Source: Cyanophora paradoxa CCMP329 (Eukaryota; Plantae; Glaucophyta). Taken from it: 64,000 nucleotides of DNA. The stretch is taken from the NCBI GenBank assembly GCA_004431415.1, contig QPMI01000416.1, forward strand, positions 806,001-870,000, in the 5' to 3' direction. Below the pieces are notes generated by a model. It made no database searches. It saw only the letters and a program-made list of their open reading frames with translations, and was not told where the DNA came from. A program made the translations under genes and the position numbers. This document shows, one piece after another, positions 23,873 through 31,200 of the stretch; within the stretch, counting starts at the first letter, position 1, and each line of letters starts with the position of its first letter.

Positions 23873-25388
23873 CTACAAGAAGTAGGAAACAGTGCTCCGG
23901 GTCGGGATCATCTCGTGCGCCTCGGACACTTCCCTGAAGATCTGCGCCGGACCACGTAAGCTGGCGAAAGTGGCTCGCAGGTTGACCCGCGGACCTTGAA
24001 CTCGCGCTCAAGGTTGTCCTTGAAGGCCAGGATGGCGGCAACGTTGCCACAGCGGTAGCAGTAGTTGGGGGCCGACCAAACTGTCACAAGGCTCTTGTCT
24101 GGGAACATGTACTTGTACCCCTCTTGAACCAGCTGATGCGCCCGGCAGATCAGCTCCAGCTTGTTCAAATGGTTGAACTGCGTAGCTCCATGACGTCAAT
24201 CGCGGCCAAGGCAGCGCGGGGCCCAGAACGAGCCGCCCGCACCTCTGCCGTCACTTTGGCGCCGAAGAGCCATCCGGCACCTCGCGGGCTGACCGCCCAC
24301 GTCTCGATCTCCTCCGGGTCGCTCCACATAAGGTCTTCGCGGGCGGAGCACTCAGGGGGGACATCACGGGCACAGGAAGGGGCAGGGCTAACCGCAGAAG
24401 GAGCCCTCGTGAGGGATCTCCTGTCTCCGGTTGATAGTGCGGATCTGGTCCAGCGTCCGGATGTCGGGGGACAAGCCGCCGTGCACGCAGAGGATACGGC
24501 CGTCGATGACCTACGACCGCGGCCGGTTCGCACCGATGTACGCAGCGGCGGGACGCAATGCGAACAGCGGCGCACGGCGGCGAGCGTCAGGTAATCGAAG
24601 ACATCTGTACAGTACTTCCACGCGTTCGCGTTGCCGTACTTGCGCTGGCACTCGTCGTAAAAACCGTACACCTGCGTGATTTGCCGCGACTCGTGGTTCC
24701 CGCGGAGTAGTGTGATGTTCGCTGGATACCTGCGAGTAGACGGTGAGGATGCCAGACAGAAGGAAAGAAGAGAGAAGAAGTCGACGGGATCGGTCGGCTC
24801 ACCTCGCCTTCAAGCAGAGCAGCAGCGTGAATGTTTCAAGGCTGTTGTATCCACGGTCGACGAAGTCACCCTGTAAACGCAAAAGCACGCGGTGAGCTGC
24901 AAACGGACGCGCACGCGGGGAGCTAGCCCCGGCAGCGATTCACCATGAAGATGTAGTTCGTGTCGGGGATCTCGCCTCCCGTGCGGAATAGCTCCAGCAG
25001 ATCGTGGAACTGGCCGTGGATGTCTCCGCACACTGTGACGGGGCTGCTAACGGGCTGCACATTGCTCTCCTCGAGCAGCAGCTCCTTAACCTGCCATCGA
25101 ACGCGTCGAAACCAGAGGGCCGCTCGACGAGGAGGGATGCGAACCCCCTCGCAGAGCTTCTTCAGATCGTTTTCTGAAAGATACTCGCACTTCCTGACCT
25201 GCTCAATCCTGTGACCCTGGGTGGTGAGCACAGGGCCGGGCAGGCGAAGATCGGCGAGGAATGGCACCATTTGTCCTGTTTCCGGTCGAATCACGGAAGG
25301 CACAGTCGCGGGCGAGAGGGGACAAGCGTCAGACGCAGGCAGCGGGAGACACACACGGCATTCAAACGGGCCGCGAGCTCACCAACAT
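23873..25388 (-). CDS. PPP6C: Ser/Thr protein phosphatase 6 catalytic subunit (PP6/Sit4/FyPP)
   Basis: [88 protein letters not shown]-terminal YFL*. Confidence 0.93.
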
Positions 25389-25649: not shown

Positions 25650-27694
25650 ATGGTGGCCATGGAGGCCGTGCAGCATGTGCTTTCGCCGGTAGGAGAGTCG
25701 GTGCAATCCAGCGAGGCCGCCGTCGAGCGTGCGTACGAGTGCCCGATATGCCACGAGGTTCTCTTTGATCCAGTGACGACACATTGCGCCCATTCGTGCG
25801 CTGTTTCTACCATGCCCCCGCCCTTCGGCACTGAGGCGCAGCGGGTCCTAGGTTTTGCAGACGCTGCATCGCGGCGGCGTTGCGGCGGGACCCCCGCTGC
25901 CCCTGCTGCAGGGCCGTACAGGTCCCGGACCTCCTACAGCCGAACGCGGAGCTGCGCGCGGCGGTGGCGAGGGACTGCCCCAACGCGTACGACGAGCGCG
26001 CGCGCGCCAACGCGAGCTCCGTCCTTTTCGTGGGATCGACCGGTTCTGGGTGCGTTAGCCGGGTCCGGCCTCGGCGCGCCGCGCGGCCGCCGCCGAGACG
26101 CGCAATTCATGCGCAGGAAGAGCGCGGCGATCAACTACCTGTGCGGGGAGCGGGTGTGCGGGACGAACGCCTTCGAGCGGGAGACGCAGGACGTGGCTTG
26201 GCACGCGCGGACGCTCCCGGCGGCGGGGACAGAGGACGGGCTTGACACGGGCGGTGCGGGCCACGAGCTCCTGGCCTTCCGCCTCATCGACACCCCGGGG
26301 CTCCTCCCGCACGGTGCCCGCGCCCCGCCCCGCCCCGCCGTCCCGCGGGATGAGCGCGCTGCAGCCGAGGGGCGCGCGGAGCGGGAGGAGGACACGCGGG
26401 AGAACCGATGCGCGCTCGACAAGGCGCGCGGGGCAGGCGGGGCGCCGCCCGGGCCCGGAGCCCACATGACGCCGTCGCAGATTGTGCGCTTCGTGACCAA
26501 GGGCGCCGAGGAGGGGCGGGCGGGCGGTGCGCGCGGGACCCCGGCCTGGACGCTTGCGGCGTTCTTCTAGGACGCGAGCGGGCGCGGGGCGCACTGCGGC
26601 AGAGACGCACGCGCACTGCGTGGCGTGGGTCGAGCGGGCCGACCTGCTTCGCCCCGAGGTGCCGTCCCCTGAAGTGTCTGCCGGCCGGCGGCGCGCTGAG
26701 ACGCAGCGGGGAGCGGCGCAGGGGGACCGGAGGACGGCGCGGGCGCTGACGGAGCGGCTCGGGGCGGGGGTCTGGCGGCGGGCGGCCCTGCTGCTGACCC
26801 ACGCCGAGGGGACCCCCGACGCCGCCCTCGCCGCCCGCCTCCGCTCCATGCGGGCCCGCCCCGCCCCGCCCCGCTCCCCCGCCCCGGCGCACGCGCCGAG
26901 GCCGGGGCGGCGCGCGCAGGAGGCGATACGCGAGGCGAGCGGGGACGCGGGGGCGCCGGCGCCCCCGCACGCGCTCCTCTCATGCCTGCGGGGGCGCCCC
27001 CTTCCCCCGGGCTGCTGCTCGCCCGCCGAGGCGGCCGGTGTGCTGGCGCGCGTGGCGCGGGCCGCAGAGGCCGACCCACGCGCCGCCGCCGCTTCTGCAG
27101 CTTCCCTCGCCCGCGGCGGGCCGCCCTTTCCCATCCCGGGTCCGACCAAACGCTTGGCTGTTCGCCTCCCCGCGCTGCCGGCGCTGACGCTGCGGCGCAG
27201 CTGCTGCGGAGGAGGACGGGGAGCGGGGCGGGTGGCTGGCGTCGGAAGAGAGCGGGGCGGGGTGGGAGGTCGTCGTCGTCCGAACTCCCGAGCCCTGGCC
27301 CGTGACCGCCCTCAAGGCGCGCCCTCTCAAACGTTCTCCCCCTCTCGCCTCCCCCCGACCCCCCTCCCCCTGGCGCCTCTCTTCCCGTCTTATCGGAGAG
27401 GTAAATCTGCAAGGCTTTCGCGGTGGGGCAGCACCTCTGGACGAGCAGGTACCCCCTCTGGCTGAAGCTTTTTCAGGCGAGGGACACGTCCCCCCACACC
27501 CAACCCCCCGTCCCCTTCCCCCCGTTGAGCCGGAGATTGTGCAGGGGGCGCTAGCGCTGCTCTGGCTGTCCGGCTTCTCTTCGGTGAGCGTGCGCAGTGG
27601 ACGGGGTGGCAGCGCGGCGACCCTCGAGTCTTTACAGGGGACGCGCTCCTACCGGCACCGCCTGGGGCCCCGCCGCGCCGTCATCAACGGTTAG
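25650..27694 (+). CDS. RING-finger (C3HC4) / Toc34-like GTPase fusion with probable C-terminal hydrophobic tail
   Basis: CPICHEVLFDPVTTHCAHSFCRRC...CPCC, then VLFVGSTGSGKSAAINYLCGERV...IDTPGL...VAWVERADLLR...DRRTARALTERLGAGVWRRAALLLTHA. 3' exons give WPVTALK/GALALLWLSGFSS/GTRSYRHRLGPRRAVING* (3' exon model less certain). Confidence 0.8.
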
Positions 27695-27811
27695 CCGCCG
27701 CGCGCCAGCTGCAACGTGTGAAGCTCTCAGTCAAAGTGAATAGCTAGCGTCCTACGGTAGTAGCGCTAAATCTTACATATCCACTGCTGACTAAGTGAGT
27801 CGTACTACGGT

Positions 27812-27841
27812 AGTTACTAAGTTACTAGTAACTTAGTAACT
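27812..27841. repeat. Perfect 30-bp palindrome
   Basis: AGTTACTAAGTTACTAGTAACTTAGTAACT equals its own reverse complement. Confidence 0.95.
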
Positions 27842-28203
27842 GTGACAGAAGTCTCCAGCGGGGCCGGCGCCGCTGGCACTGCGGCATAATACTATGATCA
27901 TTGGATATCCGATGATCGATTCGACTTTCAAGTTTAATATGCCATGATGCCATGCAAATGAGAGCATACGAATGGCAAAAAAGTTTAACTTCGGAACGTC
28001 GGAAGCCCTTGAAGTGCATCACATAGCGGTGATGGCGTGGCCCCAGCGACAGACTAACTGGCCGGGCCGCGGCAGGCTCGCGACGCCTCGCGTTCGGCAT
28101 CATCGTCAAACAACGCCGTGACGTGCTCGAGTATGTACTTATATGCAGAAATAGTAAACATGAGGAACACTGGGGCCGGTGCGGGGCTGGCGGGCCGGCG
28201 GGG

Positions 28204-31200
28204 CTAGACGGCGATCTTGCTGAGGGCGAGCTCGGAGGCAAGCAGGTCGGAGTCCTTAAGGCCGCACAACTGCGCCCGCCCCGACGTCAGCCGCCGCCGC
28301 CGCCCGGCGCGCAACGCGGGCCCCGCTGCTGCGCACCTCGCGGACGTGCTGCGTGCAGGCGCGGCACTGGATGCTGCCCGGGCGCGCCCCGGTCGGCACC
28401 TCCTGCCTGCCCCGCGAGACCCGCTTCATCGGCGGGCTCTGGCCGGCCCCCGTCGGGCTTGACGCCGGCGCTGCCTCATGCGGCGACGAGGGCGCTTGCT
28501 GCACGGGCGCCTGCGGCTGAGGCGGCGGCGGGTGCGCCTCGGGCTCGCCGGCAGCGGCGGCGGCGGCGGCGGCGGCAGCGCCGGCGCCGGCGGCGGCGTC
28601 CGGGGCGAGGGGGAGGTCGAGGAGGAGGAGGTCGGGGTCGTCGCGCGGGAGGTGCGCATCACAGAAGGCCGTCGGGCACGTGCGGCACTTGTGCCGCGGC
28701 TCGCCCAGCGTCTCGGCCGCCACGAAGCAGAGGCCGCAGTGGTGCCAGGGGCAGTGCCACTTGCCCTGGGGCACGGCGGCGAGGCCGACGCAGGCGGAGT
28801 GGTAGACCTTGCCGCAGCGGGGGAAGTCGCAGATGATGAGGGTACCGCCGTCCTTGCAGACGAAGCAGGCCCCCTCGGGCTCCGGGTCGGGGAGCTCTTC
28901 CCGCTGGTTCGCCCCCAGCACGTAGTTCAGGTGGAAGGCCGCCGCCACCGAGATGTGCGCGGGGCCGACCCCACCGTGCGCCCCCGCCCGCCCCGCCCCC
29001 ACCGCCCCCGGGCCTCCCGCCGCCGGCGACGCGTTCGACGCCCGGCTGCCGCGCCCCGTCAGACAACAGCGGCGCCAGAAAGAAGAGCGCAGGGCGCACT
29101 TGACGCATATAGGGCACTTGTAGGTGCCGTCGGCGGCAGCCGCCGCCGCGCGGGCGGCCTCGCGGGGGCCGTAGAGGAAGCGGATGCAGGGGGCGCAGAG
29201 GACGCGGGGGCAGGCGCTGCAGGGGCGGGCCTCGGCCTCGCGGAGGGCGCAGCAGCAGCAGAGGGCGTCGCGGGCGGCGCCCGGCTCGGCGGGGCGCGCG
29301 TCGGGGGCGGCGAGCGCCGTCGTCGCGAGGCGCCCCAGCGGGAGCTGCGGGATGGCCCCCGCCGCCGCGTCCTCCGCCCCCTCCCGCCCCGCCCCGCCTC
29401 CCCGCTGCCGGCCCCGCCGCCTCCGCCTCCACGCGGGCGGGGGCGGGCGCCGGCGCGGGCGGGCGGGGCGGGTGGAGCGGAGGGCGGGGGCCCGCGGTAG
29501 TCCTCCTCGCGGGTGAGGCCGCAGGCGGCGGCGCGGGCGACGCGGGCCTCGACGCGAGCCGCGCAGCCGATGCAGAGCCAGAAGTTGAGCTCGCCCAGCG
29601 CCCCGTGCCGCCGGAAGCGCGCCCCGTGCTGCGCGCAGCCGCGCAGGCAGCACGCGACGCTGTGGTCCACCACCGTCTCGCTGATCGGGCGCCCGCCCTC
29701 CATCGCCGGGGGCGCCTGCGCGACGCGCGCAACCTCTGCGCCGTGGCCCTCCGCAGCGGCGGCCGCCTCGTCGCGGCGGCGTGGGGCGACGGCGGGGAGT
29801 GGGGCGGGGGAGGCGGTGGCGGAGCGCTCGGCGGGGGGCGGCGGGGGCGGGGCGCCCTGGACGAGGTGGGTGTGGAGGCGGCGGAGGCCGAAGACGCCTG
29901 GGGCGACCTTGATGAACTCCGAGGCGGGGCCCTTGGAGGAGATGTCGAAGTTGAGCGTCGCCGCGAGGTTCTGCGTCGGGTCCTTGGCCCGCGAGCCCGA
30001 GCGCAGCATCTCTTCCCGGAGGGCGATCTCGCAGAGCTCGTCGGCCCGCATCGGGCGGTCGTGCTCGGCGAGGATGCGCGCCGCCGCCGCCTTCACCCGG
30101 AACCCGATCGAGTTCTCCGACTCGGCCCGCCCCGCCTTCGCCTTCCCGGGCCCCGCCCCCGCCCCTGCCGACCCTGCCGCCGCTGCAGCCGCCGCCTCCT
30201 CCGCCCCGCAAGCCTCCGCTGCTGGCGCCAGCGCGTTCGACTCCTCGCCGGCTGCCGTGCCGACCGGCGACGGCTCCGGCGCCGCCTGCTCAATTGCCGC
30301 CACCCCCGGTCCTGTGGCTGTTGTCGCGGCCGCCGCCGCCGCCGCGGCTGCTGCGGCTGCTGCGGCTGCAGAGCGGCGGGAGGAGCGAGTGCCGAATTCA
30401 GCGGGGGACGGGAGCGCCGAAGCGGTGGGTGTGCCGCGCGTGTTGTACCGCCCCGGGGGCGCCCTGCGCATGCGCGGCGGCGTCGGTAAAAGAAGAAGCT
30501 GGCGGGGTGGGGCTGGGGGGGCGGCGGGCACGTATGGAGGGGGCACTTCCAGTCGGTGCCGGGGAGGGTGACGGCGTGGAGGCAGCCGGCGTGGTAGCTC
30601 TTGGCGCAGGCGGGGTCGGCGCAGGGGATGAGGAAGCCGTCCTCCTTGCAGACGTCGCAGACGGCCTCGTTGAGGGTGCCCGTCCCCGCCTCGGGCCCCT
30701 CGGGCGGGGCGGGGCCCTCGTGTGCCGCCTCCCGCGTCGAGTGCGCGCGCAGGCGCTCCTTGACGGCGGCCTCGGAGAGGGGCGCGGCGCGCGGCTGCGG
30801 GCCCCCGGCCTCGGGCGAGATCGCGTAGCAGCTCCCGTCCTCCGTGTTCCCGAAGATCTGGACGAGGCTCGCGGGGAGGCCCAGCACCGCCAGCAGGCCG
30901 CCCTTGTGCCCCTGGTGCACCGACTTCAGGTGCTGCACCCGGTCCGCGTAGATCGCGAAGCTGCCGCGCGCCGTCAGCGTCGCACGCGCCCCGCCGGCAG
31001 CGCCGGGCGCACTCGCGGCCGTTGCCCTTGACGATGAGGTTGGTGTCCTTGTAGGGCATGCGGTCGCCCGGGAACCAGGGCTTGACCTGGGGCAGCTTGT
31101 AGGCGAGGATGTCGATGCCGCGGCTGGGCGGGGCGGGGTGAGCGGGGCGACGGGCGCGTGGGGCGGGGGGGCGGGCGCGGACACGACGAGCTCGACGGCG

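What the first reader, a model, noticed from the sequence alone, without database searches (positions are those of the whole stretch)
25650..27694. RING E3-ligase domain fused to a Toc34-type plastid-import GTPase with a probable tail anchor
Seen: an N-terminal C3HC4 RING (~25740-25915) is spliced in frame to a G-domain with GSTGSGKS, DTPG, ERADLLR and LLLTHA, and 3' exons give a hydrophobic stretch plus basic tail. Established: LTHA (His in G4), GERV..xF after the P-loop, and DRLDxYR..D....AIT..FG..IW are hallmarks of TOC GTPases. The Arg in DLLR aligns by eye with the Toc34 dimerisation Arg (pea R133). In land plants TOC turnover uses a separate RING ligase, SP1 (CHLORAD). Inference: this protein could dock on TOC receptors by G-domain heterodimerisation and ubiquitinate them or incoming precursors, an independent ubiquitin-TOC control system. 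I know of no described RING-Toc34 fusion.
Basis: partly seen in the sequence, partly recalled or inferred. Interest (0 to 1): 0.85.

Follow-up and report, generated by a model that had tools for sequence, protein, structure and literature searches.

The report
RING ligase fused to TOC-family GTPase
A nuclear gene of the glaucophyte alga Cyanophora paradoxa encodes one protein that joins a ubiquitin-ligase RING finger to a GTPase of the chloroplast-import (TOC) receptor family and a hydrophobic C-terminus; the same fusion sits on a single transcript in a second glaucophyte genus, so it is real and conserved, but where it sits in the cell and what it ubiquitinates remain untested.

Summary
Window 25650-27694 (+) is the Cyanophora paradoxa gene tig00020563_g11382 (11 exons, 457 aa). 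One exon (25852-26049) encodes both the second half of a C3HC4 RING and the start of the GTPase P-loop, so the fusion does not depend on gene modelling. The orthologue in Gloeochaete wittrockiana lies on one transcript as an uninterrupted ORF (RING, G domain, hydrophobic C-terminus).

By sequence and by predicted fold the G domain is closest to Toc34/Toc33, then Toc159-type, and far from GIMAP and septins. It has the [DE]R.D..R...G..W...LTH block and an Arg aligned with pea Toc34 R133. In a tree it falls inside the eukaryotic TOC clade but outside the green Toc34 and Toc159 groups. It is a TOC-family GTPase, not a Toc34 orthologue.

The C-terminal hydrophobic helices are conserved but only moderately hydrophobic. 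The basic tail is not conserved.

An unexpected sibling turned up: glaucophytes, including Cyanophora, also have TOC-like GTPases fused to two B-boxes. No canonical glaucophyte Toc34 or Toc159 surfaced.

Function is inferred only: a GTP/dimerisation-gated E3 ligase at the plastid surface. I found no published description. This is a new variant of a known kind.

The parts
25650..25795 (+). Exon 1. Start codon at 25659 in the annotation; an alternative in-frame ATG lies at 25650. Encodes an N-terminal helix and the first half of the RING (C28, C31, C43, H45; first Cys codon at 25740).
25796..25851 (+). Intron 1 (56 nt, GT-AG). It splits the RING between H45/S46 and F47/C48.
   Evidence: the two flanking exons match complementary halves of the RING profile
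25852..26049 (+). Exon 2, the fusion exon. Encodes the second half of the RING (C48, C51, C62, C65, R66; to about 25912), a helical linker (LLQPNAELRAAVARD...) and the first strand plus P-loop start of the G domain (VLFVGSTGSG).
26117..26313 (+). Exon 3. Encodes the P-loop Lys-Ser (KSAAINYLCGERVCGTNAF), switch I (ET135) and G3 DTPG (26289-26300).
26365..26526 (+). Exons 4 and 5 (26365-26423, 26481-26526), separated by a GC-AG intron. They encode a charged insert after switch II and the helix IVRFVTKG. Their length matches the Gloeochaete transcript only if introns 3 and 4 are removed.
26603..26658 (+). Exon 6. Encodes HCVAWVERADLLRPE, the TOC-type [DE]R.D..R block. R229 (26650-26652) aligns with pea Toc34 position 133, the dimerisation Arg finger.
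26722..26853 (+). Exon 7. Encodes ...ALTERLGAGVWRRAALLLTHAEG: the TOC-type G..W block and G4 with His (T257-H258, 26797-26802).
26920..27139 (+). Exon 8. Encodes the end of the G-domain fold (last strand and two helices, residues 276-348). The ENS(G)RC motif of Toc34 is not conserved here.
27201..27476 (+). Exons 9 and 10 (27201-27316, 27414-27476). They encode an acidic/Gly linker, then the first moderately hydrophobic helix (residues 383-395) and the start of the second (PLWLKLFQ).
27545..27694 (+). Exon 11. Encodes the hydrophobic core GALALLWLSGFSSVSV (to 27592), an Arg-rich 33-residue tail (27593-27691) and the stop codon (27692-27694).

Best explanation
Shown: this is a genuine, conserved glaucophyte nuclear gene for a three-part protein.
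1. An N-terminal RING-HC finger. All eight zinc ligands are kept. So are the Ile after the first Cys pair, the Pro before the last Cys pair and the Arg after the last Cys; I read these three as E2-contact and linchpin positions from general knowledge. The finger is flanked by helices, as in the TRIM, BRCA1 and RAD18-type RINGs that were its best matches.
2. A G domain of the TOC (Toc34/Toc159) family. G1, G3, the His-containing G4 and the dimerisation Arg are intact.
3. Two conserved, moderately hydrophobic C-terminal helices.

Inferred mechanism:
- The C-terminus holds the protein on a membrane, most likely the outer envelope of the muroplast (cyanelle), with the RING and G domain in the cytosol.
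- As in Toc34/Toc33, the G domain dimerises through the Arg-finger face in a nucleotide-dependent way. The partner is either itself or the B-box-fused TOC-like GTPase that Cyanophora also encodes.
- Dimerisation brings RING domains together and switches on E2-dependent ubiquitination of itself, of its partner or of stalled precursors.
- GTPase state would then be coupled directly to turnover or quality control at the import site. In land plants this job falls to the separate RING ligase SP1 (CHLORAD).

The protein is a lineage-specific TOC-family branch, not an orthologue of green Toc34.
For: - One gene, one mRNA. Exon 2 alone carries the RING half and the P-loop start. The exon coordinates reproduce the annotated protein exactly. 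The Gloeochaete transcript L001 has an uninterrupted 438-aa ORF with the same order of parts and an upstream in-frame stop.
- Conservation. All RING ligands, I30, P63, R66, the P-loop, T135, DTPG, R224, D226, R229, G245, W249, LTH and the PLWL...GF.S.SV C-terminus are identical in the two genera at 42% overall identity.
- TOC family by profile and sequence. TIGR00991 E 7e-10 and TIGR00993 E 3.7e-8. PDB phmmer ranks Toc34/33, then Toc120/90, then septin and GIMAP, for both orthologues.
- TOC family by fold. The AF2 G domain has pLDDT above 90, and Foldseek's best matches are pea Toc34 and atToc33 (E 1e-12, TM 0.64-0.68) against GIMAP at 4.5e-9.
- TOC family by tree. The protein sits inside the eukaryotic TOC clade (100/99), separate from prokaryotic relatives.
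- Arg finger. HMMER aligns R229 to pea Toc34 position 133.
- RING type. The best PDB matches are active E3 RINGs: TRIM5, RING1B, RNF125, BRCA1, TRAF, COP1 and RNF8.
- Possible partner. The Cyanophora B-box + TOC-like GTPase P0123 and its relatives P0012/P0074, which have a C-terminal TM, exist. In the best tree they are sister to the RING pair, with weak support of 52/38.
- Precedent for ubiquitin control of TOC: SP1/CHLORAD (PMC7054747, PMC11913770).
- Precedent for a RING E3 coupled to a GTPase domain in one chain: TRIM23 (PMC12075517).
Against: - There is no localisation, expression or biochemical data for this protein.
- C-terminal hydrophobicity is marginal: KD 1.48-1.49 over 19 residues, against 1.9-2.3 for most of the Toc34 TMDs scanned and 1.3 for one of them. 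The basic tail is not conserved.
- The Toc34 ENS(G)RC motif after the last strand is not kept, so guanine binding may differ.
- Scores against the curated TOC models are far below their cut-offs.
- The RING has low pLDDT in the model because its alignment is shallow.
- In C. merolae the Toc34-like proteins were not recovered with importing preproteins and bound them weakly (PMC9407449). Non-green TOC-like GTPases may therefore not work in import at all.
- The tree had no GIMAP, AIG1 or septin outgroup rows. None reached E 1e-3 in the search, and none could be brought in by reference.
- The AF2 model was built on a TOC-rich alignment, which biases it towards the TOC fold.
Confidence: 0.45

Rival explanations
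1. The protein is the same, but it works away from the plastid. It would be a membrane-associated or cytosolic RING-GTPase in cell-autonomous defence, autophagy or endomembrane quality control, in the manner of TRIM23 or GIMAP/AIG1 proteins. The TOC-like G domain would serve simply as a dimerising switch.
For: - RING and B-box are TRIM modules, and TRIM23 couples E3 and GTPase activities in antiviral autophagy (PMC12075517).
- The nearest prokaryotic relatives of this G domain are often fused to TIR domains, and one sits next to an integrase.
- C. merolae Toc34-like proteins were not found on importing preproteins.
- The C-terminal anchor is weak.
Against: - The G domain is specifically nearer to plastid TOC GTPases than to GIMAP or septins.
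- It lies in the same clade as Toc34/Toc159.
- The family was detected only in plastid-bearing Archaeplastida among 1.84 billion representatives.
Confidence: 0.25
2. The protein is an accessory regulator that docks by G-domain heterodimerisation on separate, canonical Toc34/Toc159 receptors of the glaucophyte. It ubiquitinates them or incoming precursors, as an independent analogue of CHLORAD.
For: - The Arg finger and the TOC-type interface motifs are conserved.
- Toc34-Toc159 heterodimerisation and SP1-mediated TOC turnover are established in the green lineage.
Against: - No canonical glaucophyte Toc34 or Toc159 was among the 81 relatives of this G domain, as far as sources could be read.
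- A 2026 preprint lists a single Cyanophora TOC protein.
- The only other TOC-like GTPase found in Cyanophora is itself a zinc-finger (B-box) fusion.
Confidence: 0.15
3. The G domain is a degenerate pseudo-GTPase that serves only as a scaffold or dimerisation module for the RING ligase, without nucleotide-dependent regulation.
For: - The Toc34 ENS(G)RC region is not conserved.
- There are large charged inserts after switch II.
- Family-model scores are low: AIG1 27.6 bits against a cut-off of 27, and TIGR00991 38.5 bits against 421.
Against: G1 (GxxGxGKS), the switch I Thr, G3 (DTPG), G4 (TH) and the Arg finger are all intact and identical in two genera that share only 42% identity.
Confidence: 0.1
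4. This is a gene-model artefact: two neighbouring genes, a small RING protein and a GTPase, have been merged by the predictor or by the reader.
For: The authors of the Cyanophora assembly warn that the automated models need curation (PMC6704402). Four of the ten introns are GC-AG.
Against: - The second half of the RING and the P-loop start are in one stop-free exon.
- The Gloeochaete transcript encodes the same fusion in one ORF.
- Loop lengths match the orthologue only with the annotated introns removed.
Confidence: 0.02

Closest known systems
Toc34/Toc33 (pea Toc34, Arabidopsis Toc33, Chlamydomonas Toc34): tail-anchored GTPase receptors of the chloroplast outer-envelope translocon
   Same: - They are the best sequence and fold matches of the G domain.
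- Shared motifs: GxxGxGKS, GERV...F, DTPG, [DE]R.D..R with the Arg at the pea R133 position, G..W, and LTH with His in G4.
- Both have a hydrophobic segment near the C-terminus.
   Different: - Toc34 has no RING.
- The glaucophyte protein branches outside the green Toc34+Toc159 group and scores 38.5 bits against the 421-bit cut-off of TIGR00991.
- It has charged inserts after switch II and lacks the ENS(G)RC motif.
- Its C-terminal segment is less hydrophobic than most of the Toc34 proteins scanned.
- Its location is unknown.
Glaucophyte B-box + TOC-like GTPases (P0012 and P0074 from MMETSP transcripts; Cyanophora tig00000113_g5611.t1 = P0123)
   Same: - They have the same TOC-family G domain: ERFDSHR...G..VW...LTHG.
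- They have the same design: an N-terminal TRIM-type zinc module, a G domain and a C-terminal hydrophobic segment.
- They are sister to the RING pair in the best tree, with weak support.
   Different: - They carry two B-boxes instead of a RING, so no E3 catalytic module is evident.
- They keep the VAVIEN(D) motif.
- Their TM is stronger (KD 1.6-1.9).
- As far as I could find they are also undescribed.
SP1 (SUPPRESSOR OF PPI1 LOCUS 1) of the CHLORAD pathway in land plants
   Same: It is a RING-type E3 at the plastid outer envelope that ubiquitinates TOC components (PMC7054747, PMC11913770). This is what the glaucophyte protein might work like.
   Different: From general knowledge, SP1 is a separate membrane protein with no GTPase domain, and it reaches TOC through its own transmembrane and intermembrane-space parts. 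Here the RING is covalently part of a TOC-family GTPase.
TRIM23 (ARD1) of animals
   Same: It is one chain that combines a RING E3 with a GTPase domain, and both activities are needed for its function (PMC12075517). It is a precedent for coupling a nucleotide switch to ubiquitination.
   Different: - The domain order is RING-B-box-coiled coil-ARF, so the GTPase is C-terminal.
- The GTPase is of the ARF family, not the TOC/paraseptin family.
- It has no membrane anchor.
- It functions in animal innate immunity.
AIG1/GIMAP (IAN) GTPases
   Same: They belong to the same broad paraseptin group and the same Pfam family (PF04548, 27.6 bits). Many have C-terminal anchors.
   Different: They are much more distant: GIMAP7/5 score E 0.4-0.8 against 1e-9 for Toc34, and the Foldseek E-value is about 1000-fold weaker with a lower TM-score for most GIMAP chains. 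The TOC-specific RxD..R / G..W / LTH block is present here; that it differs from the GIMAP motifs is my recollection, since no GIMAP sequence was aligned.
Cyanidioschyzon merolae 'similar to Toc34' protein (BAM81885.1 = P0078)
   Same: It is another non-green TOC-family GTPase that branches as its own deep lineage in the same polytomy.
   Different: It has no zinc-finger module by Pfam. A paper on C. merolae found that the two proteins annotated there as Toc34 homologues (CMP284C, CMQ137C) were not associated with importing preproteins (PMC9407449). I did not map P0078 to either locus tag.

Membership tests
TOC GTPase family (Toc34/Toc159; TIGR00991/TIGR00993; part of Pfam AIG1 PF04548) | Intact G1 (GxxGxGKS) and G3 (DTPG) motifs | tested here: met
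   GSTGSGKS and DTPG are in the window translation and in P0001. They are invariant or nearly so in the alignment of 81 relatives.
TOC GTPase family (Toc34/Toc159; TIGR00991/TIGR00993; part of Pfam AIG1 PF04548) | TOC-specific block [DE]R.D..R ... (I/L)T..(F/L)G..(I/V)W ... LTH (His in G4) | tested here: met
   ERADLLR...LTERLGAGVW...LLLTHA aligns column by column to pea Toc34 DRLDAYR...ITDSFGKGIW...ALTHA. R224, D226, G245, W249, L256, T257 and H258 are invariant in alignment A2.
TOC GTPase family (Toc34/Toc159; TIGR00991/TIGR00993; part of Pfam AIG1 PF04548) | Dimerisation/catalytic Arg finger (pea Toc34 R133, atToc33 R130) | tested here: met
   HMMER aligns P0001 R229 with position 133 of chain 1h65_A. 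The Arg is conserved in Gloeochaete. Its function is not tested.
TOC GTPase family (Toc34/Toc159; TIGR00991/TIGR00993; part of Pfam AIG1 PF04548) | Closer to TOC GTPases than to GIMAP/AIG1 or septins, and placed inside the TOC clade | tested here: met
   PDB phmmer gives Toc34/33 at 1e-9 to 4e-6, Toc120/90 at 1e-4, Cdc11 at 0.02 and GIMAP at 0.4-0.8; the ranking is the same for the Gloeochaete orthologue. Foldseek ranks Toc34/33 first. In the tree it lies inside the eukaryotic TOC clade at 100/99. Caveat: the tree contains no GIMAP or septin rows.
TOC GTPase family (Toc34/Toc159; TIGR00991/TIGR00993; part of Pfam AIG1 PF04548) | Reaches the curated cut-off of the Toc34 (TIGR00991) or Toc159 (TIGR00993) model | tested here: not met
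   38.5 bits against 421.55, and 32 bits against 660.7.
Toc34 proper (orthologue of green-lineage Toc34/Toc33) | Branches within the Toc34 clade | tested here: not met
   The RING pair is a separate lineage in a polytomy with the B-box pair, C. merolae P0078 and a weakly supported (83/63) green Toc34+Toc159 group.
Toc34 proper (orthologue of green-lineage Toc34/Toc33) | Single C-terminal transmembrane tail anchor | tested here: inconclusive
   There are two conserved C-terminal helices (AF2 residues 383-395 and 402-416). The best 19-residue KD window is 1.48, against 1.9-2.3 in most of the Toc34 proteins scanned and 1.3 in one of them. The basic tail is present in Cyanophora only.
Toc34 proper (orthologue of green-lineage Toc34/Toc33) | Resides in the plastid outer envelope in a complex with the Omp85/Toc75 channel, and binds transit peptides | not testable with these tools
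   No localisation or interaction data were found.
RING-HC (C3HC4) E3 ubiquitin ligases | Eight zinc ligands in C-x2-C-x(9-39)-C-x(1-3)-H-x(2-3)-C-x2-C-x(4-48)-C-x2-C spacing, and a Pfam RING score above the gathering cut-off | tested here: met
   The spacing is C28-x2-C31-x11-C43-x-H45-x2-C48-x2-C51-x10-C62-x2-C65. zf-C3HC4_2 scores 40.2 bits against 27, and zf-C3HC4 scores 29.4 against 21. All ligands are identical in Gloeochaete.
RING-HC (C3HC4) E3 ubiquitin ligases | E2-contact and linchpin residues: a hydrophobic residue after the first Cys pair, a Pro in the last CPxC, and a basic residue after the last Cys | tested here: met
   I30, P63 and R66 are present and conserved in both genera. 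They align with TRIM5, RING1B and RNF125. Their role is inferred from general knowledge of RING E3s.
RING-HC (C3HC4) E3 ubiquitin ligases | E2-dependent ubiquitin transfer | not testable with these tools
   This needs an in-vitro ubiquitination assay.
AIG1/GIMAP (IAN) GTPases | G domain closest to GIMAP/AIG1 members | tested here: not met
   Pfam AIG1 is just above its cut-off (27.6 against 27), but that family also covers TOC G domains. GIMAP chains score E 0.39-0.81 against 1e-9 for Toc34 and rank below all Toc34/33 chains in Foldseek.
TRIM (RING-B-box-coiled coil) proteins | RING followed by B-box(es) and a coiled coil in one chain | tested here: not met
   There is no B-box hit in P0001 or P0082. 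B-boxes occur on the separate sibling GTPases.
SP1-type CHLORAD ligases | Sequence homology and architecture of SP1: two TMDs, an intermembrane-space domain and a C-terminal RING | not tested
   No SP1 sequence was available by reference. The architecture differs, judged from general knowledge.

The most novel reading that the evidence does not exclude
Glaucophytes run their plastid-surface GTPase receptors as a 'split TRIM'. The RING-fused and the B-box-fused TOC-family GTPases would heterodimerise through their G domains, as Toc34 and Toc159 do, in a GTP-dependent way on the muroplast outer envelope. That would assemble a nucleotide-gated E3 ligase which ubiquitinates stalled precursors or the receptors themselves. 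On this reading, ubiquitin control was built into the earliest TOC-type GTPases and was later handed to separate ligases such as SP1 in the green lineage.
Probability: 0.12. Interest if true: 0.9.

Novelty: new variant of a known kind. Interest (0 to 1): 0.68.

Why it matters
Little is known about how glaucophytes and red algae recognise and police proteins entering their plastids. The role of their Toc34-like GTPases is openly questioned (PMC9407449).

A conserved protein that hard-wires a ubiquitin-ligase module to a TOC-family GTPase, together with a B-box sibling, gives a concrete handle that can be cloned and tested. It bears on three questions:
- whether ubiquitin-dependent control of plastid import is ancient or arose more than once;
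- what non-green TOC-like GTPases actually do;
- whether GTPase dimerisation can gate an E3 ligase.

There is also a practical point. Domain surveys that use only G-domain extracts, or the frame-shifted database representative of the Gloeochaete orthologue, would miss the RING.

Tried and rejected
- Word-index homologue searches were almost blank. Exon 3 found only the locus's own annotated protein. The profile of the two RING orthologues found only P0001 and missed even the Gloeochaete cluster. I take this as a limit of the method with this Ala/Arg/Gly-rich sequence, not as absence.
- Exon-by-exon family scans gave only sub-threshold hits. The clear family calls came from the database's own spliced record.
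- Two DNA-pattern scans of metagenome contigs added no member. The B-box profile found nothing. The RING profile found one locus, L005, which is an unrelated SNF2/RAD5-like RING helicase.
- A look-up of the contig for P0002 found nothing. The longer cluster member P0082 gave the transcript instead.
- Literature and supplements. I found no mention of a RING-TOC fusion, of this gene id in the supplements of the Cyanophora assembly paper (one search found no supplements held for the other paper), or of envelope proteomics that lists it.
- A 2026 preprint lists one Cyanophora 'CpTOC' (PhycoCosm id 21024). I could not map that id to this gene.
- The organism of the B-box transcripts P0012 and P0074 could not be identified. 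JGI sample 3300017186 differs from the Gloeochaete sample, and GC content is not decisive.
- GIMAP, AIG1 and septin sequences could not be added to the tree as outgroups, because none was available by reference. The comparison with them rests on PDB sequence and fold searches.
- Considered and rejected: a merged gene model (and the transcript); contamination or recent transfer (the gene has ten short spliceosomal introns and host-like GC, with GC3 of 0.88); and an RNA element in the region (no Rfam hit).
Full report
**Source and gene model**

The window is GC-rich eukaryotic DNA (about 0.55-0.82 GC) with short introns. I do not take it for human.

A homologue search with exon 3, given by reference, returned a single protein, P0001 (457 aa). 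Its record is EukProt EP00741 Cyanophora paradoxa, gene tig00020563_g11382.t1. So the window is nuclear DNA of the glaucophyte Cyanophora paradoxa, and the finding coincides with an automatically annotated, unnamed gene.

Mapping P0001 back gives 11 exons on the + strand: 25659-25795, 25852-26049, 26117-26313, 26365-26423, 26481-26526, 26603-26658, 26722-26853, 26920-27139, 27201-27316, 27414-27476 and 27545-27694. The ten introns are 51-97 nt long. Six are GT-AG and four are GC-AG.

This fits the published description of the assembly: BRAKER1/Augustus models trained on RNA-seq, a mean of 9.2 introns per gene, a mean intron length of 86 bp, and a warning that models need curation (PMC6704402).

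**How the spliced model was handled**

I searched my own reading of the gene exon by exon, by reference. I ran no search with a self-joined model. From then on, the spliced protein used is the database's own record P0001.

One script did join the exons, only to check that their translation equals P0001. It does. Nothing was searched with that string, and it was neither printed nor saved.

- Exon 1 ends ...ECPICHEVLFDPVTTHCAH(S), and exon 2 begins FCRRCIAAALRRDPRCPCCRA.
- Separately, the two pieces match complementary halves of the C3HC4 RING profile. Together they score 40.2 bits against a cut-off of 27.
- The spacing is C28-x2-C31-x11-C43-x-H45-x2-C48-x2-C51-x10-C62-x2-C65.
- The best solved-structure matches are active RING E3s: TRIM5, RING1B, RNF125, BRCA1, TRAF3/6, COP1 and RNF8.

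The decisive point for the fusion is that exon 2 (25852-26049) is one stop-free stretch. It carries the second RING half, a helical linker and VLFVGSTGSG, which is the first strand and the start of the P-loop of the G domain. No splicing decision can separate the two domains.

**Independent support from a second genus**

I ran an exhaustive HMMER search of the G domain (P0001:95-300) against 1.84 billion representative proteins. It gave only 81 hits at E ≤ 1e-3. The nearest is P0002 from Gloeochaete wittrockiana (MMETSP0308), at 46% identity and E 4e-29.

A longer member of that cluster, P0082 (438 aa), has a RING at residues 7-45, the same G domain and a hydrophobic C-terminus. It is encoded as one uninterrupted ORF (95-1411) on a 2215-nt transcript contig, L001, with an in-frame TAG just upstream of the ATG.

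The two proteins share 42% identity. All functional positions are identical:
- the eight RING ligands, plus I30, P63 and R66;
- the P-loop, T135 and DTPG;
- R224, D226, R229, G245, W249 and L256-T257-H258;
- a C-terminal PLWL...GF.S.SV segment.

Loop lengths in the G domain match only if the annotated in-frame introns 3, 4 and 6 are removed. The conserved C-terminal segment runs across the exon 10/11 junction. Both points support the 3' part of the model.

The shorter database representative, P0002, begins with an out-of-frame read of the RING coding sequence. This hides the RING from surveys that use that representative.

**What kind of GTPase it is**

- Pfam places it only just in the AIG1 family (27.6 bits against 27), a family that also covers TOC G domains.
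- NCBIfam gives the Toc34 model TIGR00991 (E 7e-10) and the Toc159 model TIGR00993 (E 3.7e-8) as the best G-domain hits. Both are far below their curated cut-offs.
- Against solved structures, by sequence, the order is pea Toc34 and Arabidopsis Toc33 (1.4e-9 to 2.4e-7), Chlamydomonas Toc34 (4e-6), Chlamydomonas Toc120/Toc90 (1.3e-4), yeast septin Cdc11 (0.02), GIMAP7 (0.39) and GIMAP5 (0.81).
- The Gloeochaete orthologue gives the same order with a smaller margin.
- The HMMER alignment lays VAWVERADLLRPEG-DRRTARALTERLGAGVWRRAALLLTHAEG on pea LLYVDRLDAYRVDNLDKLVAKAITDSFGKGIWNKAIVALTHAQ.
- An AlphaFold2 model was built on an alignment of 77 relatives. Mean pLDDT is 69.5, with the G domain mostly above 90 and the RING low because its alignment is shallow.
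- Foldseek places that model nearest to pea Toc34 and atToc33 (E about 1e-12, target TM 0.64-0.68). GIMAP7/2/5/1 come next (4.5e-9 and weaker) and septins after that. The alignment was TOC-rich, so this is supportive rather than independent evidence.

**Tree**

I built a careful maximum-likelihood tree of 55 G domains (160 columns).

- It separates a prokaryotic group from a eukaryotic TOC group at 100/99. The prokaryotic nature was checked for one member: compact genes, with an integrase, KfrA and ribonucleotide reductase as neighbours. Seven of the 81 hits carry TIR domains.
- Inside the eukaryotic group there is a polytomy of four lineages: the RING pair (100/98), a B-box pair (100/99), the C. 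merolae 'similar to Toc34' protein, and a weakly supported (83/63) green-lineage group. The green group holds Toc34-type proteins (Chlorokybus, Mesostigma and others) and a 100/100 Toc159 clade.
- In the best tree the RING and B-box pairs are sisters, at only 52/38 support.

The protein is therefore a TOC-family GTPase but not an orthologue of green Toc34. No GIMAP, AIG1 or septin sequence reached the search threshold, and none could be added by reference, so the tree has no such outgroup.

**The sibling family**

P0012 and P0074 (MMETSP transcripts, organism not identified) have two B-box zinc fingers, then a TOC-like G domain (ERFDSHR...VW...LTHG...VAVIEND), then a C-terminal TM.

A search with P0012 found the Cyanophora protein tig00000113_g5611.t1 (P0123), which has two B-boxes and the same G-domain motifs. 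Its model lacks the switch I-DTPG block and the TM, probably because exons were missed.

So Cyanophora encodes at least two TOC-like GTPases, each with a TRIM-type zinc module at its N-terminus. Among the relatives whose source could be read, none was a canonical, RING-less glaucophyte Toc34 or Toc159. A 2026 preprint lists a single Cyanophora TOC protein; I could not map its id to this gene.

**C-terminus**

- The model predicts two helices, at residues 383-395 and 402-416.
- The best 19-residue Kyte-Doolittle window is 1.48 in Cyanophora and 1.49 in Gloeochaete. Most of the Toc34 proteins scanned reach 1.9-2.3 (one, P0009, only 1.3), and the B-box proteins reach 1.6-1.9.
- The hydrophobic segment is conserved. 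The Arg-rich 33-residue tail is not: Gloeochaete ends seven residues after the segment, and no alternative frame supplies a tail.

A membrane anchor is plausible but not shown.

**Mechanism**

Shown: the architecture, the integrity and conservation of the catalytic and interface motifs, and the family placement.

Inferred: a membrane-held protein, probably on the muroplast outer envelope and facing the cytosol. Its TOC-type G domain dimerises through the Arg-finger face, with itself or with the B-box GTPase. Dimerisation brings RING domains together and activates ubiquitination of itself, its partner or precursors.

Two precedents exist. SP1/CHLORAD shows ubiquitin control of TOC. TRIM23 shows a RING E3 joined to a GTPase in one chain.

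Four things weigh against an import role:
- the C. merolae result that Toc34-like proteins were not recovered with importing preproteins;
- the weak anchor;
- the loss of the ENS(G)RC motif;
- the TIR-fused prokaryotic relatives, which keep a defence or quality-control role away from the plastid alive as the main rival.

**Novelty**

Full-text searches combining Cyanophora or glaucophyte terms with Toc34, Toc159 and Toc75, and RING with Toc34 and fusion, found no description of this architecture.

The gene itself is in a public annotation, and its G domain may already have been used in a phylogeny. RING-GTPase fusions of other families are known, for example TRIM23.

I therefore rate it a new variant of a known kind. 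It is of real interest to people who study the evolution of plastid import, but it rests on sequence inference only.

Noticed in passing
P0123 (Cyanophora tig00000113_g5611.t1, not in this window); P0012 = L002:174-1499; P0074: There is a second, apparently undescribed family: TOC-like GTPases with two N-terminal B-box zinc fingers and a C-terminal TM. It is present in Cyanophora and in two MMETSP transcriptomes of unidentified organisms. The Cyanophora model lacks the switch I-DTPG block and the TM, so exons were probably missed.
   Followed up: partly
window 26314-26364, 26424-26480, 26659-26721, 26854-26919: Four of the ten annotated introns are in frame and stop-free (51, 57, 63 and 66 nt). 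Retaining them would insert Pro/Arg/Ala-rich loops into the G domain without breaking the reading frame. Four introns (I4, I7, I9, I10) use GC-AG.
   Followed up: partly
L001:160-225 (Gloeochaete transcript) and protein P0002: The EukProt/MMETSP version of the Gloeochaete orthologue, which is the 50%-identity representative, starts with an out-of-frame read of the RING coding sequence. Its RING is therefore invisible to domain scans. Only 1 of the 81 representatives showed a RING.
   Followed up: yes
L003:5877-6959 and the 34-row prokaryotic group of the tree: Prokaryotic relatives of TOC GTPases form a clade of their own. Seven of the 81 hits are fused to TIR domains (Thoeris/retron-like matches), and one sits beside a phage-type integrase and a KfrA_N gene. 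This suggests a defence-island context.
   Followed up: partly
window 24926-25354 (- strand): An exon of a PPP-type Ser/Thr phosphatase (Metallophos, GDIHGQ motif) is transcribed divergently from the RING-GTPase gene. Only about 300 bp lie between the two 5' ends.
   Followed up: partly
window 28259-30211 (- strand): A long GC-rich ORF with an NSD-like PHD zinc finger lies convergent with the RING-GTPase gene. It also has a Cys-rich stretch that gave weak RING-like tblastn matches.
   Followed up: no
window 27700-28120: The intergenic stretch just after the stop codon looks AT-rich by eye in a window that is 55-82% GC. It contains short direct repeats of the type agtaact/tagtaac.
   Followed up: no
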